From assembly GCF_006345805.1 (NCBI RefSeq), contig NW_021825516.1, forward strand, positions 1 through 15,336: a DNA stretch of 15,336 bases, read 5' to 3'. The position numbers and the translations under genes were made by a program. Shown here one piece after another: positions 3,356 to 8,938 of the stretch; positions within the stretch are counted from its first letter, which is position 1; every line of letters starts with the position of its first letter. Under the pieces are notes generated by a model. The model worked only from the letters and a program-made list of their open reading frames with translations. It ran no database searches and was not told where the DNA came from. The stretch comes from Octopus sinensis (taxonomy: Eukaryota).

Positions 3356-3361
3356 TTTATT
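3356..3361 (-). terminator. Possible polyadenylation signal overlapping the stop codon
   Basis: The minus strand reads GAC AAA TAA A, so AATAAA includes the TAA stop. The context is AT-rich, so this could be chance. Confidence 0.3.
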
Positions 3362-6476: not shown

Positions 6477-8938
6477 TCTCTTTGATAGGTTTCCGATAAC
6501 CCTTAATGTTTCTGTAGGGGTAATGTGACCCCTATATGATTAGAATCCCATCGACATACATCTGTGGCTGTAGACGGCAGAGATAATCTGGACACAATGT
6601 CTCCATCCTCAGAAATATACAACAAGCAATCATGGTTGATGTCAGACACCACCAACTGTCCATTGGACAGATTACATATTTCGCCAATGACAAGTTTTTG
6701 GTCATTCTCCTTTTCTTTGAGTCGTAGATTTAGATTTCTGATGTAAGGATTTTTAATGGGTAAAAGGCAGGCAGACGACCGGTCTTGATACTTGTAAAGA
6801 AGAACCCTGTTGAGTTGAGTGTCCGGGACATAAAGAGTTCCTTGGAAAACAGCAATGTGAGGGTGAACAGGGAAAGGCAGTTCCCACTGCCATTTCATTT
6901 GTCCATATAGATCGTAACATCTGAGAATAGAGTGTCTCCTGAAGAGGACATAGAAATAAACATTATCAGAGTAGATGTGATGAGGGTAGCCATAGAATGG
7001 AAGGTATTTTTGAAAAAGTTCTTCACCACATGTGGAATAAAATACCATTTTATTTTCGTTTCCATCTATGACTACAAAATTAATTGGAGTTGCAGCAATG
7101 CTGACATTATGATGTCCCAGAGAAATTCTTTCTGCAATGTCAACTTTATCTTCGTTGATCAATAGGATATGGACCTCGCTTTTGTTTTCAGTGGTGGTCA
7201 CAGCTAGACACTTATTTGATACAACATGACATATTTTCAGGTAACCAGTTTGCACCTTTATTAAAGGGCCTTTTCGTAGTTCAGGACAGGTGATATACTG
7301 AAACCCTTTCATTTCAAGATAAAATACCAGGAATCTGTTTGCGTTTATTCTACAACAGAAAGAAGGAAGCTCAAGGAAAACTGAATTATTTTGGTTAATT
7401 ATTCCCCGTTATCAGTGAATAATTTAGCTTCTTGTTTTTTTGTAAATTATTAATATAGAAGATGTAGACATAGGTAGAATATTTGTAATGTTGTAGCAAT
7501 CCTCAATATCAATATAGTCTTTTAAACTGGGGTATGTAGCTGGTGGTTGTATGACAGTTGGGCCAAAAGTCTTTATTCATTTGAATACCATGTGGTTTGC
7601 CGCAATAATCTGTTACCAAAATGGTATCTTTACCAACAGAAATAGAGCGGCATTTCCTGCCAATGTCCCTCCTGTTACACCACCTTTAGCTGAAATCCTA
7701 TAAATTATTTGTCCCTGAAGGACATAGAAATAATTTGTAGAGAGAGATTTTACTTGGGAGGTGCAGAGAATGGGTCTCTACCTCCCATAACTGTTGGCCA
7801 TCCAGTTTGTAACAGATTACTCTGTTGATGCTGGCGAATGTAATTACAAGTATATTCTGGACCCCTACAGCATATCTGTAGGGGTTTCTTTGGTAATAAA
7901 TTGATAGTTAATGGTATTATCCTCCCAATCAAATTGGTAAACTATCTTACCAAACATTTCTACACCTATAAGTGTAGAATCTTCCAAGTAACTCACCATA
8001 TGTAACCCCAACTTTATCCTTTTGATCTTTAAGGTTTTGGGGCTGATAATAAGAATCATTTCTTGGAAGGGGAGGGTTGCCAGAACCATGTCTTCACTGA
8101 TTCTTGTGAAACTGGTCACAGAAGATGGACAATGGACATCAATTCTGTCACTGTCTCTTGTTACTAAACTTATTGTCTTACAAAGGTGGGAATATGTCAT
8201 CACTCCCTCCTCTATGATGACAATATTGGATATTATTGGGATTTCTTCAAATTCTTCTCCAGATTCCTCAATATTTGCTTCTCTGGTCACAACTGGCTGA
8301 AGAGGCCGAAATTTTGTGGTTACTTTTGCTGGTTCAATGGTCTTCCATCTGTATGGATTGCTGGTGACATAAATGTCAAAGAGTCTTTGTTGAAACCATT
8401 CGAGGTCCTGCTCAATAGAAATATTCTGTTCTTTAGTATATTTCAGCAAAATTCCAAGTCTCTCTTTGACCTTTTCTAAAATACGATTGGCACTTAACCC
8501 CAGACTTTCATAATGTTTGCTCTCCTTAACTATATGCTCCATAAACATCATGCAGCGATCATATTGAAGACAAATCCTCTCTATTTTAGCAACTATTTGT
8601 TTTTCAGTTTCTTTTGTGCTTTCTTTGTCTCCATGTGTGTTGAGTCTTGCCACAGATATGGCCTTCACTGCTGATTCTCTCTCTGAACTAACACTACAAT
8701 ATCCTTCATCACTTCTCCTTGAACCATCATCTTCCTCGTATTTACCCGTTTTATTGTCAACTTTATCATCCCATTTTGGTGTCGAGTCCCTTAAAGCTCT
8801 TTTCTGGGTATTTTCTTCACTTCTCCTTGAACCATCATCTTCCTCATATTTACACCTTTTATTGCCAACTTCTTCATCCCATTTTGGTGTCGAGTCCCTT
8901 AAAGCTCTTTTCTGAGTATTTTCAGTCTGGTCTTCCAT
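3357..8938 (-). CDS. Reconstructed frameshift-interrupted gene, about 1,860 aa: N-terminal charged/helical region plus six tandem NHL/TolB-like beta-propeller modules
   Basis: Three collinear ORFs are bridged by hand-translated segments that carry the same blade motifs. 5,582 nt is about 1,860 codons. There is no signal peptide. No GT-AG intron is needed to join the pieces. The fold assignment is inference from blade-like motif periodicity. Confidence 0.75.
6503..7402 (-). CDS. Middle part (module 2 and start of module 3)
   Basis: The 269-aa ORF frame is open upstream to 7408 (IINQNNSVFLELPSFCCRINANRFLVFYLE-MKG). It contains NHL-like blades (GQLVVSDINHDCLLYISEDG, GTLYVPDTQLNRVLLY, DVCRWDSNHIGVTLP). 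Confidence 0.85.
   Translation of the reverse strand: MINQNNSVFLELPSFCCRINANRFLVFYLEMKGFQYITCPELRKGPLIKVQTGYLKICHVVSNKCLAVTTTENKSEVHILLINEDKVDIAERISLGHHNVSIAATPINFVVIDGNENKMVFYSTCGEELFQKYLPFYGYPHHIYSDNVYFYVLFRRHSILRCYDLYGQMKWQWELPFPVHPHIAVFQGTLYVPDTQLNRVLLYKYQDRSSACLLPIKNPYIRNLNLRLKEKENDQKLVIGEICNLSNGQLVVSDINHDCLLYISEDGDIVSRLSLPSTATDVCRWDSNHIGVTLPLQKH
7403..7868 (-). CDS. Multiply frameshifted coding bridge (end of module 1, start of module 2), absent from the ORF track
   Basis: Hand translation by segment: 7868-7733 VGVQNILVITFASINRVICYKLDGQQLWEVETHSLHLPSKISLYK; 7732-7671 YFYVLQGQIIYRISAKGGVT; 7670 to about 7560 RDIGRKCRSISVGKDTILVTDYCGKPHGIQMNKDFWP; about 7535-7435 SLKDYIDIEDCYNITNILPMSTSSILIIYKK; 7434-7403 QEAKLFTDNG. 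Confidence 0.75.
7865..8938 (-). CDS. N-terminal part, 357 aa (duplicated charged repeat, helical region, first half of module 1)
   Basis: ATG in good context (ACT ATG G) just after a splice acceptor. Complex coding sequence. The blade motif PSSVTSFTRISEDMVLATLP aligns with the blade-2 motif of later modules. Confidence 0.85.
   Translation of the reverse strand: MEDQTENTQKRALRDSTPKWDEEVGNKRCKYEEDDGSRRSEENTQKRALRDSTPKWDDKVDNKTGKYEEDDGSRRSDEGYCSVSSERESAVKAISVARLNTHGDKESTKETEKQIVAKIERICLQYDRCMMFMEHIVKESKHYESLGLSANRILEKVKERLGILLKYTKEQNISIEQDLEWFQQRLFDIYVTSNPYRWKTIEPAKVTTKFRPLQPVVTREANIEESGEEFEEIPIISNIVIIEEGVMTYSHLCKTISLVTRDSDRIDVHCPSSVTSFTRISEDMVLATLPFQEMILIISPKTLKIKRIKLGLHMVSYLEDSTLIGVEMFGKIVYQFDWEDNTINYQFITKETPTDML
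8709..8923 (-). repeat. In-frame 108-bp (36-aa) tandem duplication within the CDS
   Basis: 8709-8815 matches 8817-8923: ENTQKRALRDSTPKWDEEVGNKRCKYEEDDGSRRS versus ENTQKRALRDSTPKWDDKVDNKTGKYEEDDGSRRS. Confidence 0.97.

What the first reader, a model, noticed from the sequence alone, without database searches (positions are those of the whole stretch)
3357..8938. Hidden ~1,860-aa single-exon protein made of six tandem, highly diverged beta-propeller modules
Seen: the three ORFs are collinear and join into one frame path. Approximate module starts are 8245, 7520, 6700, 5865, 4995 and 4305. A blade-2 motif recurs six times: SVTSFTRISEDMVLATLP, PSFCCRINANRFLVFY, ATDVCRWDSNHIGVTLP, IKMCRWQSNTLVITN, VGGVCFTQESHIMATVP, ALDICRWTEECFIVAF. 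A blade-3 motif also recurs six times: LGLHMVSYLEDSTLIGV, TGYLKICHVVSNKCLAV, QPYVRVCKMGECEIVCY, NNYKCVASLSNNQLVLS, IPYGVIWRKVVGIYWCV, KYYNRIYKYNDNQLVCG, spaced about 255, 265, 285, 288 and 223 aa apart. Known: TRIM-NHL proteins (Brat, TRIM71, TRIM2/3) carry one six-bladed NHL propeller after a coiled coil. Inferred: this is a TRIM-NHL-like derivative in which the propeller was multiplied six-fold, giving a cytosolic multi-ligand binder (RNA or pathogen sensing). I know no characterised protein with this architecture.
Basis: partly seen in the sequence, partly recalled or inferred. Interest (0 to 1): 0.78.

Follow-up and report, generated by a model that had tools for sequence, protein, structure and literature searches.

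The report
Octopus six-propeller NHL protein gene
The window holds a frame-broken copy of an octopus-only, many-copy gene whose intact versions encode a roughly 1,800-residue protein made of six diverged NHL-type beta-propellers, two of which vary between copies on one face as binding surfaces under diversifying selection do.

Summary
On the minus strand, 8938..3357 reads as one ~1,863-aa path. It needs eight frame corrections, not two. Seven of the indels lie in 7403-7872 and one at 6507.

Intact paralogues in Octopus vulgaris carry the same protein as a single uninterrupted 5.4-kb ORF. The family has no Pfam domain, no name and no literature. It was found only in Octopus species and Argonauta.

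Six modules are real:
- A profile HMM built only from five outside single-propeller proteins (some RING+B-box+NHL) finds six domains in every full-length member.
- hhalign gives 71-99% probability for each module, all in register.
- AlphaFold predicts 23-24 strands per well-modelled module.
- Foldseek returns only multi-propeller proteins.
- An M4-only profile hits only TRIM-NHL propellers in the PDB.

No RING, B-box or detectable coiled coil is present, so this is a TRIM-NHL-derived propeller array, not a TRIM.

New here: M4 and M6 show dN/dS of 1.4-3.2 among close copies, while M3 and M5 stay below 1. M4 variability sits on alternate loops (p=5.5e-5), meaning one propeller face.

Function is inferred: an intracellular multivalent recognition scaffold. 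Whether this copy is a pseudogene or carries assembly errors is undecided.

The parts
8939..8970 (-). Probable 3' splice acceptor (polypyrimidine tract plus AG) that opens the giant coding exon, 7 nt upstream of the ATG
   Evidence: The sequence ttttccttatatttctttacag|attcactATG is read directly. Paralogue gene models P0017, P0018 and P0020 join a short 5' exon at the equivalent 'FTM' position.
8246..8938 (-). Start codon (8938) and N-terminal non-propeller region of about 230 aa. It is hydrophilic and predicted helical in its second half, and contains a 2 x 108-bp tandem duplication (8705-8924).
   Evidence: Translation. Tandem repeat. AlphaFold helices at residues 57-145 of paralogue P0059, with pLDDT about 55. 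No Pfam, PDB or HH match.
7521..8245 (-). Propeller module M1, broken in this copy by indels at about 7872, 7736, 7673, 7559 and 7532
   Evidence: hhalign 90.7% against outside NHL propellers. 23 predicted strands with pLDDT about 80 in paralogue P0059. Indels.
6701..7520 (-). Propeller module M2, with indels at about 7434 and 7403
   Evidence: hhalign 71.4%. 23 predicted strands with pLDDT about 80. HMM domains reach iE 1e-7 in the divergent members P0068 and P0113.
5866..6700 (-). Propeller module M3. It has a 1-bp deletion at about 6507 and a 45-bp in-frame insertion at about 6164-6208 in a Gly/Arg-rich loop.
   Evidence: hhalign 97.7%, E 1.7e-12. HMM iE 1.7e-17. Indels.
4996..5865 (-). Propeller module M4, one of the two variable modules. 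It has 24 predicted strands, and variability among close copies sits on alternate loops.
   Evidence: hhalign 99.0%, E 3.3e-18 over 211 columns. AlphaFold pLDDT 80-90. PDB hits are only TRIM-NHL propellers. dN/dS 1.4-2.6. Alternate-loop entropy 1.01 against 0.12 bits, p=5.5e-5.
4306..4995 (-). Propeller module M5, homogenised among paralogues (96.8-98.3% DNA identity to seven loci) and poorly modelled
   Evidence: hhalign 94.3%. HMM iE 6e-9. DNA identity. dN/dS 0.3-0.7. pLDDT below 50.
3357..4305 (-). Propeller module M6, the second variable module, plus the stop codon at 3359-3357
   Evidence: hhalign 96.2%. AlphaFold all-beta with pLDDT 60-90. dN/dS 1.7-3.2. Alternating variable loops in its C-terminal half.
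7403..7872 (-). Cluster of seven frame-breaking 1-2-bp indels, mostly single-base deletions in runs of 2-7 identical bases
   Evidence: Frameshift-aware protein-to-DNA alignment. DNA alignment to L001. All are unique to the window among seven paralogous loci. dN/dS in this stretch is 0.21, with only 9 substitutions.

Best explanation
Shown. Window 8938..3357 (minus strand) is one copy of a multi-copy gene family found only in Octopus species and Argonauta. Intact members encode, in one giant coding exon, a protein of about 1,800 aa. It consists of an N-terminal region of about 185-230 aa with no recognisable domain, followed by six tandem modules of 230-320 aa. Each module is homologous to the entire six-bladed NHL propeller of TRIM-NHL-type proteins. 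The six-fold array is old: it is shared by Argonauta and by a divergent paralogue on another chromosome. The modules are only 15-25% identical to each other. The RING and B-box of the TRIM ancestor are absent.

The copies have spread by segmental duplication, mostly on one 29-Mb O. vulgaris chromosome, and they exchange segments. M2, M3 and M5 are kept nearly identical between copies. M1, M4 and M6 differ. Among close copies, M4 and M6 change faster at amino-acid-changing sites than at silent sites. In M4 the changes fall on every second loop, which is one face of the propeller.

Inferred. The variable loops are the B-C and D-A loops. These form the 'top' face that Brat and TRIM71 use to bind RNA. 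The protein is therefore most likely an intracellular, non-catalytic, multivalent binding scaffold. M4 and M6 would carry copy-specific recognition surfaces under diversifying selection, as in immune or genetic-conflict receptors. M2, M3 and M5 would bind common partners or build the frame.

The copy in the window. It carries eight frame-breaking small indels. It is either a young pseudogene or a good gene spoiled by local consensus errors in a long-read assembly. I put this at roughly 40:60.
For: Gene continuity:
- tblastn and a frameshift-aware alignment to P0006 run end to end.
- P0006 and P0001 are uninterrupted ORFs in GCA_951406725.2.

Taxonomic range:
- 65 word-index hits are all Octopus.
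- An exhaustive profile search of 1.84 billion representatives gave 39 hits at E up to 1e-3. The 29 with E up to 1e-10, as far as they were looked up, are Octopus or Argonauta.

Six NHL-type propellers:
- The outside hits carry RING, B-box and NHL in Pfam.
- An HMM built from those hits alone finds six domains per protein.
- hhalign per module gives 71-99% probability, in register. Module-against-module hhalign reaches 93%.
- An M4 profile hits only Thin, Brat, TRIM3, TRIM71 and TRIM2 in the PDB.
- AlphaFold predicts 23-24 strands for M1, M2 and M4 at pLDDT about 80 or more.
- Foldseek top hits are all multi-propeller proteins, with E from 1e-20 to 1e-10.

Evolution:
- Flanks are 93-96% identical to another locus.
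- Identities are mosaic: M1 is 97% against 75%, while M5 is 97-98% to all loci.
- In all six pairs of close copies, dN/dS is 1.4-2.6 for M4 and 1.7-3.2 for M6, against below 1 for M3 and M5.
- Alternate-loop variability in M4 has p=5.5e-5 by loops and 2.7e-9 by residues. The same alternation appears in the second half of M6.

Localisation: no signal-like or transmembrane-like segment.

Indels: they are unique to the window and clustered, most (6 of 8) lie in or beside short runs of one base, and the surrounding sequence is constrained.
Against: - No Pfam model, NHL included, reaches its threshold on the window protein. The best family member scores 18.5 bits against a cut-off of 20.
- The M1 and M2 matches are weak in the window's own clade, with iE of 0.04-0.08.
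- M5 and most of M3 are modelled with pLDDT below 50.
- I could not inspect coordinates, so ring closure and blade number rest on strand counts and Foldseek.
- Individual dN/dS tests are modest (p 0.004-0.2). The pairs are not independent, and gene conversion can distort pairwise estimates.
- Assigning the variable loops to the 'top' face relies on analogy with the NHL consensus.
- There are no expression, localisation or ligand data. The immune or conflict role is inference from evolutionary mode only.
Confidence: 0.75

Rival explanations
1. This copy is a true, recently inactivated pseudogene. The eight indels are real germline mutations, and the locus makes no full-length protein.
For: - Eight frame-breaking indels are present.
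- Other copies in the O. vulgaris reference are also split: L003 into 827+121+477 aa and L007 into 465+1304 aa.
- Overall dN/dS against P0006 is 0.92.
- No gene with this product is on record.
Against: - Seven of the eight indels fall in 470 bp of a 5.6-kb CDS, whereas neutral decay should spread them.
- That stretch has only 9 substitutions beside its 7 indels, and its dN/dS is 0.21.
- Every other CDS indel is a multiple of three.
- No stop codon has arisen by substitution.
- Six of the eight indels change the length of a short run of one base, as long-read consensus errors do.
Confidence: 0.4
2. The gene is intact in the animal, and the frameshifts are local assembly or polishing errors. Short reads cannot be placed uniquely in a stretch that is nearly identical among paralogues.
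For: - The clustering, the run-length context, the deletion bias and the low substitution count are the same observations as listed against the pseudogene rival.
- The region is 96-98% identical to several paralogues.
- L007 breaks frame 1 nt away, in the same GGGGAAA run.
Against: - There are no read data and the source assembly is unknown.
- M5 is even more homogenised, yet it has no indel.
- One event is a 2-bp deletion that is not in a run of one base.
Confidence: 0.55
3. The modules are generic beta-propellers (WD40, YWTD or other) that only converge on NHL-like motifs. On this view there is no descent from a TRIM-NHL gene.
For: - Foldseek top hits are WD40-type and YWTD multi-propeller proteins, not NHL domains.
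- WD40 proteins appear among the weak profile hits.
- No RING or B-box is present.
Against: - The WD40 hits cover only one short stretch, profile positions 673-754. The NHL proteins align over 200-230 residues.
- The outside relatives share the family's two signature motifs and carry RING, B-box and NHL.
- The PDB sequence hits of the M4 profile with E below 0.2 are exclusively TRIM-NHL domains.
- Whole-model Foldseek favours long multi-domain targets regardless of propeller class.
Confidence: 0.07
4. The three ORFs are three separate genes, or chance ORFs in repetitive DNA.
For: Three ORFs with their own ATG or GTG codons are listed mechanically. Some database models begin at the Met of the second ORF, namely P0002 and P0024.
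Against: - Continuous single ORFs exist in paralogues.
- Homology continues across every gap once the frame is shifted.
- The truncated models coincide with frame breaks at their loci.
Confidence: 0.02
5. The architecture is the same but the role is different. On this view the family acts as RNA-binding post-transcriptional regulators or structural scaffolds, for example in the nervous system, as with other octopus gene expansions, rather than in immunity or genetic conflict.
For: NHL propellers of Brat and TRIM71 bind RNA on the top face (established knowledge; these are the PDB relatives). Known octopus expansions such as protocadherins and C2H2 zinc fingers are neural (titles).
Against: dN/dS above 1, birth-and-death turnover with broken copies, and face-restricted hypervariability are more typical of conflict-driven recognition than of housekeeping regulators. 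No expression data are available either way.
Confidence: 0.3

Closest known systems
TRIM-NHL proteins (Brat, TRIM71/LIN-41, TRIM2, TRIM3, TRIM32/Thin)
   Same: The propeller module is the same kind of domain. The M4 profile hits only these NHL domains in the PDB. The NHL-like 'D..N..I.iF..dG' blade signature is present, and each module has six blades by strand count.
   Different: - Six propellers instead of one.
- No RING, B-box, filamin domain or detectable coiled coil.
- Pfam NHL threshold not reached.
- Lineage-restricted and multi-copy rather than conserved single-copy regulators.
Acanthosepion (Sepia) pharaonis CAE1315789.1 (P0088) and unnamed relatives P0092, P0089, P0095 and P0096
   Same: These are the nearest sequence relatives outside the family. 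They share both signature motifs (GIC.W...I.VT.P and Y..v....n.l.C) and align with every module over most of the propeller.
   Different: They have a single propeller, 280-660 aa in total. P0088 keeps RING and B-box and P0092 a B-box. None of them is characterised.
LRP4, LRP2 and LRP5/6 arrays of YWTD six-bladed propellers
   Same: Several six-bladed propellers strung along one chain. They are among the top Foldseek hits.
   Different: They are extracellular receptors with a signal peptide, EGF spacers, LDL-A repeats and a membrane anchor, none of which is present here. There is no sequence relationship.
DDB1, IFT-A subunits and Utp21 (multi-WD40-propeller scaffolds)
   Same: Intracellular multi-propeller scaffolds with top Foldseek scores. 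They are a functional analogy for a multivalent platform.
   Different: Seven-bladed WD40-type propellers, two or three per chain, universally conserved and single-copy. They match the family profile only over one blade-length stretch.
Rapidly evolving TRIM repertoires (primate TRIM5/TRIM22, fish finTRIMs)
   Same: Evolutionary mode: tandem expansion, with positive selection focused on the ligand-binding surface of the C-terminal domain. This rests on established knowledge and on titles.
   Different: Those use a B30.2/SPRY domain and retain the RING E3 ligase. Here the variable surface is on NHL propellers and no ligase domain exists.

Membership tests
TRIM (tripartite motif) family | N-terminal RING finger | tested here: not met
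   Pfam scans of the window segments and of six family members find no RING. The N-terminal region has no Cys/His pattern. Only the atypical model P0056 has a RING, at E 4e-5 and below the cut-off, and it may be a fused gene model.
TRIM (tripartite motif) family | One or two B-box zinc fingers | tested here: not met
   There is no zf-B_box hit in any family member. B-boxes are found in the outside relatives P0088 and P0092.
TRIM (tripartite motif) family | Coiled coil preceding the C-terminal domain | tested here: inconclusive
   AlphaFold predicts helices at residues 57-145 of P0059, but with pLDDT about 55. hhalign against the pre-propeller regions of the TRIM-like relatives gives 0.3% probability. 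There is no PDB hit.
NHL-repeat beta-propeller (Pfam PF01436 / TRIM-NHL C-terminal domain) | Significant match to the NHL repeat model | tested here: not met
   There is no PF01436 hit on the window protein or on P0006, P0042, P0051 and P0053. The best in the family is P0068, at 18.5 bits against a cut-off of 20.
NHL-repeat beta-propeller (Pfam PF01436 / TRIM-NHL C-terminal domain) | Homology of the whole domain to bona fide NHL propellers | tested here: met
   Profile hit to the RING+B-box+NHL protein P0088 at E=1e-8 over about 220 aa. hhalign 71-99% for all six modules. The M4 profile hits Thin at 6e-5, Brat at 1.5e-4, TRIM3 and TRIM71 at about 5e-3, and nothing else below E 0.2.
NHL-repeat beta-propeller (Pfam PF01436 / TRIM-NHL C-terminal domain) | Six four-stranded blades forming a closed propeller | tested here: inconclusive
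   23-24 predicted strands in M1, M2 and M4 at pLDDT about 80 or more. Foldseek gives probability 1.0 to propeller proteins. The alternation of variable and conserved loops fits a beta-meander. Coordinates could not be inspected, and M5 and part of M3 are low confidence.
WD40 repeat proteins | WD40 repeat matches across the propeller | tested here: not met
   No WD40 Pfam hit. WD40 proteins match only profile positions 673-754.
LDL-receptor-related YWTD propeller arrays | Signal peptide, EGF spacers, LDL-A modules and a membrane anchor | tested here: not met
   No such Pfam domains. The N-terminus is hydrophilic and no 19-residue window exceeds a Kyte-Doolittle score of 1.8.

The most novel reading that the evidence does not exclude
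Octopods may possess a previously unrecognised class of germline-diversified intracellular receptors. Each would be a chain of six NHL propellers derived from a TRIM-NHL gene that lost its ligase. Dozens of copies on one chromosome would shuffle modules, and the top faces of propellers 4 and 6 would evolve under positive selection to recognise changing targets such as viral or transposon RNA or protein. This would be an invertebrate counterpart of TRIM5, finTRIM or NLR repertoires built on a different fold.
Probability: 0.3. Interest if true: 0.85.

Novelty: new variant of a known kind. Interest (0 to 1): 0.66.

Why it matters
Cephalopod innate immunity and lineage-specific gene innovation are poorly understood. 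The expansions described so far are mainly neural, such as protocadherins and zinc fingers.

This family is large (at least 30 gene models on one 29-Mb O. vulgaris chromosome). In the searches run here it was found only in octopods. It has no domain annotation and no literature that I could find.

Showing that it is a six-fold NHL-propeller array gives it a structural identity. Finding two modules with one-face hypervariability and dN/dS above 1 gives a testable hypothesis about recognition. It also gives a clear experimental handle: swap or mutate the M4 and M6 top faces.

A chain of six NHL propellers is, to my knowledge, not described for any characterised protein. It would extend what the NHL fold is used for.

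For genome annotation, the result shows that many 'hypothetical' fragments of 600-1,300 aa in octopus gene sets are pieces of one 1,800-aa gene type split by frame breaks.

Tried and rejected
- Pfam on the window segments and on six family members gave nothing significant.
- PDB sequence search with the 1,060-aa ORF and with the N-terminal region gave only noise.
- hhalign of the N-terminal region against the pre-propeller (coiled-coil) parts of the TRIM-like relatives gave 0.3% probability. A coiled-coil remnant is therefore not shown.
- The first representatives job failed because the profile exceeded 1,200 positions. It was rebuilt with fewer full-length rows.
- The word-index search with P0088 found only 3 further proteins, all classical RING/B-box/filamin/NHL TRIMs. 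It did not reveal an octopus single-propeller ancestor.
- An exact look-up of the window's 1,024-aa ORF product found nothing on record, so the source assembly and species stay unknown.
- The frameshifts are not shared with paralogues, so they are not inherited through duplication.
- A transposon or viral origin of the long ORF was rejected. The protein has no transposase or RT domain, and the copies share more than 6 kb of flanks on both sides as segmental duplications. The only retroelement piece is a separate LINE fragment upstream.
- No tRNAs were found.
- Five literature searches, including six LOC identifiers, returned nothing on this family.
- An automated odd/even loop count was first confounded by 1-2-residue DSSP strands. 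It was redone with strands of 3 or more residues.

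
Full report
**1. What is in the window**

The minus strand between 8938 and 3357 carries three large ORFs: 7865-8938, 6503-7312 and 3357-6476. Several shorter open stretches lie in other frames between 7400 and 7900. 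In a frame-corrected conceptual protein of 1,863 aa they recur with the stated periods (255-290 aa, and 223-226 for the last). The distance between the two motifs of a pair is constant at 36-41 aa.

**2. It is one gene, and intact copies exist**

The 1,060-aa C-terminal open stretch finds 65 database proteins. All are from Octopus vulgaris, O. sinensis or O. bimaculoides, and all are 'uncharacterized' or 'hypothetical'. Full-length members are 1,780-1,850 aa.

P0006 (1,801 aa) and P0001 (1,798 aa) are each encoded by a single uninterrupted ORF on O. vulgaris chromosome OX597841.1, 29.19 Mb, assembly GCA_951406725.2. tblastn and a frameshift-aware protein-to-DNA alignment show that the window is collinear with P0006 from about residue 50 to the last residue.

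Eight frame-breaking indels interrupt it:

| Window position | Change |
|---|---|
| ~7872 | -1 |
| ~7736 | -2 |
| ~7673 | -1 |
| ~7559 | -1 |
| ~7532 | -1 |
| ~7434 | +1 |
| ~7403 | -1 |
| ~6507 | -1 |

No stop codon remains once the frame is followed. The other seven indels inside the CDS are all multiples of three: 45, 6, 3, 3, 3, 3 and 3 bp.

Three paralogue models (P0017, P0018, P0020) have a tiny 5' exon spliced just before 'FTM(E)…' and then one giant exon. The window has a matching polypyrimidine-AG acceptor 7 nt upstream of the ATG at 8938. The coding sequence is therefore effectively a single exon, probably with a 5' UTR intron.

**3. Pseudogene or assembly error?**

All eight indels are unique to the window among seven O. 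vulgaris paralogous loci. Seven lie within 470 bp. Six change the length of a short run of one base, and seven are deletions.

That stretch differs from P0006 by only 9 substitutions and has dN/dS 0.21. Neutral decay long enough to collect eight frameshifts should have scattered them over 5.6 kb and produced stops. The pattern looks more like a locally unpolished long-read consensus in a stretch that is 96-98% identical among paralogues.

On the other hand, the O. vulgaris reference also contains split copies: L003 (827+121+477 aa) and L007 (465+1304 aa). L007 breaks 1 nt away, in the same GGGGAAA run. That run is either a slippage hotspot or a sequencing-error hotspot. I cannot decide without reads. 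I rate artefact about 0.55-0.6 and real pseudogene about 0.4. The window ORF product is not on record in the gene collection.

**4. Six modules, each a whole NHL-type propeller**

Pfam finds nothing in the window protein or its relatives. An exhaustive HMMER search with a family profile (A2, 1,178 positions) against 1.84 billion representative proteins gave only 39 hits at E up to 1e-3. Those looked up are as follows.
- Family members from Octopus and from Argonauta hians (P0066, 1,913 aa).
- A divergent paralogue conserved in three Octopus species on another chromosome (P0068 and P0113).
- Outside the family, a small set of single-domain proteins aligning over 200-230 residues.

The single-domain proteins are P0088 from the cuttlefish Acanthosepion pharaonis (656 aa, E=1e-8), P0092, P0089, P0096 and P0095. 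Pfam shows RING + B-box + NHL in P0088, B-box + NHL in P0092, and NHL in P0089 and P0096.

Four tests tie the modules to these propellers:
- hhalign of each of the six module sub-alignments (24 full-length paralogues) against an alignment of these five propellers gives 90.7, 71.4, 97.7, 99.0, 94.3 and 96.2% probability. All are in register from module start to propeller start. The N-terminal region gives nothing.
- An HMM built from the five outside sequences alone finds six domains in the conceptual window protein and in P0006, P0001, P0017, P0034, P0042, P0051, P0053, Argonauta P0066 and P0111, and P0068 and P0113.
- Module-against-module hhalign is weaker but in register. M3-M6 gives 93%, M4-M6 90%, M4-M5 82% and M3-M4 71%. 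Modules are 15-25% identical where they can be aligned.
- A profile of M4 alone (eight family sequences, A4) searched against PDB sequences returns only TRIM-NHL propellers below E=0.2. These are Thin (6e-5), Brat (1.5e-4), TRIM3 (5e-3), TRIM71 (6e-3) and TRIM2 (0.09). The alignments run through the NHL blade signature.

**5. Fold**

AlphaFold2 on the window's 1,060-aa ORF (17-row alignment) gave mean pLDDT 56. M4 reached 80-90 and M6 60-90, both all-beta. M5 and the M3 remainder were poor.

On P0059 (978 aa, covering the N-terminus plus M1-M3, 33 rows) it gave mean pLDDT 62. The model has low-confidence helices at residues 57-145. M1 and M2 are at about 80 with 23 strands each, and M3 is at 57-78. 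M4 has exactly 24 strands, which is six four-stranded blades.

Foldseek against the PDB returns hundreds of hits with probability 1.0. The top ones are all multi-propeller proteins: IFT-A subunits, LRP4 and LRP2 YWTD arrays, DDB1, Utp21 and Lgl2. E-values run from 1e-20 to 1e-10. TM-scores are low because whole multi-domain models were compared. I could not inspect coordinates, so ring closure is inferred.

**6. What it is not**

No RING, B-box, filamin, WD40, EGF or LDL-A domain is present. The N-terminal region of about 185-230 aa has no detectable similarity to the coiled-coil region of the TRIM-like relatives or to any PDB chain. No signal-like N-terminus or transmembrane-like segment is present. 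The protein fails the TRIM membership test. It is best described as a descendant of the NHL propeller of a TRIM-NHL-type gene, multiplied six-fold.

**7. Evolutionary behaviour (new relative to the finding)**

*Copy number.* At least 33 clusters at 90% identity lie on the same 29-Mb chromosome, with a few copies on other chromosomes. Located copies sit at 9.26, 9.57, 10.42, 21.88, 21.90, 22.03 and 22.66 Mb.

*Segmental duplication.* The window's flanks match the P0001 locus at 93-96% over several kb on both sides.

*Mosaicism.* The window's M1 is 97% identical to L001 but about 75% to L002, L003 and L007. M5 is 96.8-98.3% identical to all seven loci. M4 is 94% to L002 and L003 and 73-77% to L004-L006. 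In more distant pairs, synonymous divergence is 0.03-0.15 in M2, M3 and M5 but 0.4-0.56 in M4 and M6.

*Module-specific dN/dS.* The values below cover all six pairs among the window, P0006, P0001 and P0002. Nei-Gojobori estimates; single-pair p from 0.004 to 0.2.

| Module | dN/dS range |
|---|---|
| M3 | 0.47-0.99 |
| M4 | 1.4-2.6 |
| M5 | 0.29-0.74 |
| M6 | 1.7-3.2 |

*One-face variability.* Column entropy among 21 close copies was mapped on the 24 predicted strands of M4. It alternates perfectly between loops. The twelve odd loops average 1.01 bits and the eleven even loops 0.12 bits. Mann-Whitney gives p=5.5e-5 on loops and 2.7e-9 on residues. Strands average 0.33 bits. The C-terminal half of M6 shows the same alternation.

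In a beta-meander propeller, alternate loops lie on opposite faces, so the variation is confined to one face. By register with the NHL blade consensus, the variable loops are B-C and D-A. That is the 'top' face used by Brat and TRIM71 for RNA binding. This last step is inference.

*Deeper divergence.* M2, M3 and M5 are also the better conserved modules in comparisons with P0034, P0042 and P0053. The difference largely disappears in the deepest comparisons, Argonauta P0066 and the divergent paralogue P0068.

**8. Most likely mechanism**

The following points are shown:
- The six-NHL-propeller architecture.
- The absence of ligase domains.
- Expansion and mosaicism of the copies.
- Accelerated, face-restricted change in M4 and M6.

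The following is inferred. The protein is an intracellular, non-enzymatic, multivalent binder. M4 and M6 provide copy-specific recognition surfaces under diversifying selection. M2, M3 and M5 serve common interactions or architecture. The N-terminal helical region may mediate assembly.

The evolutionary mode resembles immune or genetic-conflict repertoires such as TRIM5 and the finTRIMs. I put an immune or conflict role at about 0.3-0.4 and an endogenous RNA-regulatory or scaffold role at about 0.3. No expression or ligand data could be obtained.

**9. Novelty**

Five literature searches, including searches for the LOC identifiers, found nothing on the family. The fold and the ancestry are of a known kind. 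The six-propeller, ligase-less architecture and its restriction to octopods are, as far as I could establish, undescribed. I rate it a new variant of a known kind.

The window copy itself is a broken or mis-assembled member, which lowers the interest of the locus. The family-level result is worth following up.

Noticed in passing
window 8705-8924 (minus-strand coding, N-terminal region): A 2 x 108-bp tandem duplication (91% match) repeats a 36-aa segment (ENTQKRALRDSTPKWD..KYEEDDGSRRS) in the N-terminal region. The N-terminus is of the 'MEDQTENT' type seen in P0017, P0018 and P0020. Yet the body of the gene is closest to P0006, which has the other ('MEKINEEN') N-terminus. This is another sign of module shuffling.
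   Followed up: partly
window ~10760-11960, ORFs 10824-11156, 11250-11462 and 11410-11649 (+): A GC-richer stretch (0.43-0.48) of about 1.2 kb is absent from the otherwise 93-96% identical paralogous flank in L002. It holds broken ORFs that look like the C-terminal end of a non-LTR (LINE/RTE-like) reverse transcriptase, for example '...LHWYGHAARMDEDS...GRGRPRKTWDEVV...'. It is probably a truncated retroelement insertion upstream of the gene. It was not run against any domain library.
   Followed up: no
window 2335-2957: About 600 bp of (TGA)n/(GAC)n microsatellite lies some 400 bp downstream of the stop codon. It generates the spurious ORFs listed at 2284-3148 on both strands and the local GC and GC-skew peak.
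   Followed up: partly
window 3356-3361 (minus strand): A canonical AATAAA hexamer overlaps the TAA stop codon (gac aaa TAA ata). It may be the polyadenylation signal, which would give a very short 3' UTR. Conservation in paralogues was not checked.
   Followed up: no
window ~6164-6208; also P0034 (M4) and P0042 (M6): Low-complexity insertions sit in propeller loops and differ between copies. The window has a 45-bp in-frame Gly/Arg/Tyr-rich insertion. P0034 has an acidic D/N/G-rich insert of about 45 aa in M4. P0042 has tandem 'ESEDQIFE/LSV' repeats near the end of M6.
   Followed up: no
L007 ~9900-10000 (O. vulgaris OX597841.1, 10.42 Mb) against window 7403-7405: The P0002 locus is split into 465-aa and 1,304-aa models by its own 1-bp deletion in the same GGGGAAA run. 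This is 1 nt from the window's deletion. The run is a recurrent slippage site or a recurrent sequencing-error site.
   Followed up: partly
P0056 (O. vulgaris, 953 aa): This gene model has ankyrin repeats and a C3HC4-type RING-like stretch (below the Pfam cut-off) at its N-terminus, followed by family modules corresponding to parts of M3/M4 and to M5-M6. It is either a genuine ligase-bearing relative or a fused gene model.
   Followed up: no
window 9447-10750 and 1289-2430 against the CDS: Non-coding flanks are 93-96% identical to paralogous loci. That is as similar as, or more similar than, the M4 and M6 coding DNA (90-94%). This is unusual for coding against non-coding sequence and consistent with accelerated change in those modules.
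   Followed up: partly
M1 across loci L001-L007 (window 7521-8245): M1 exists in two deeply diverged classes, about 75% DNA identity and dS about 0.74 between P0001 and P0006. These classes are distributed among otherwise closely related copies.
   Followed up: partly
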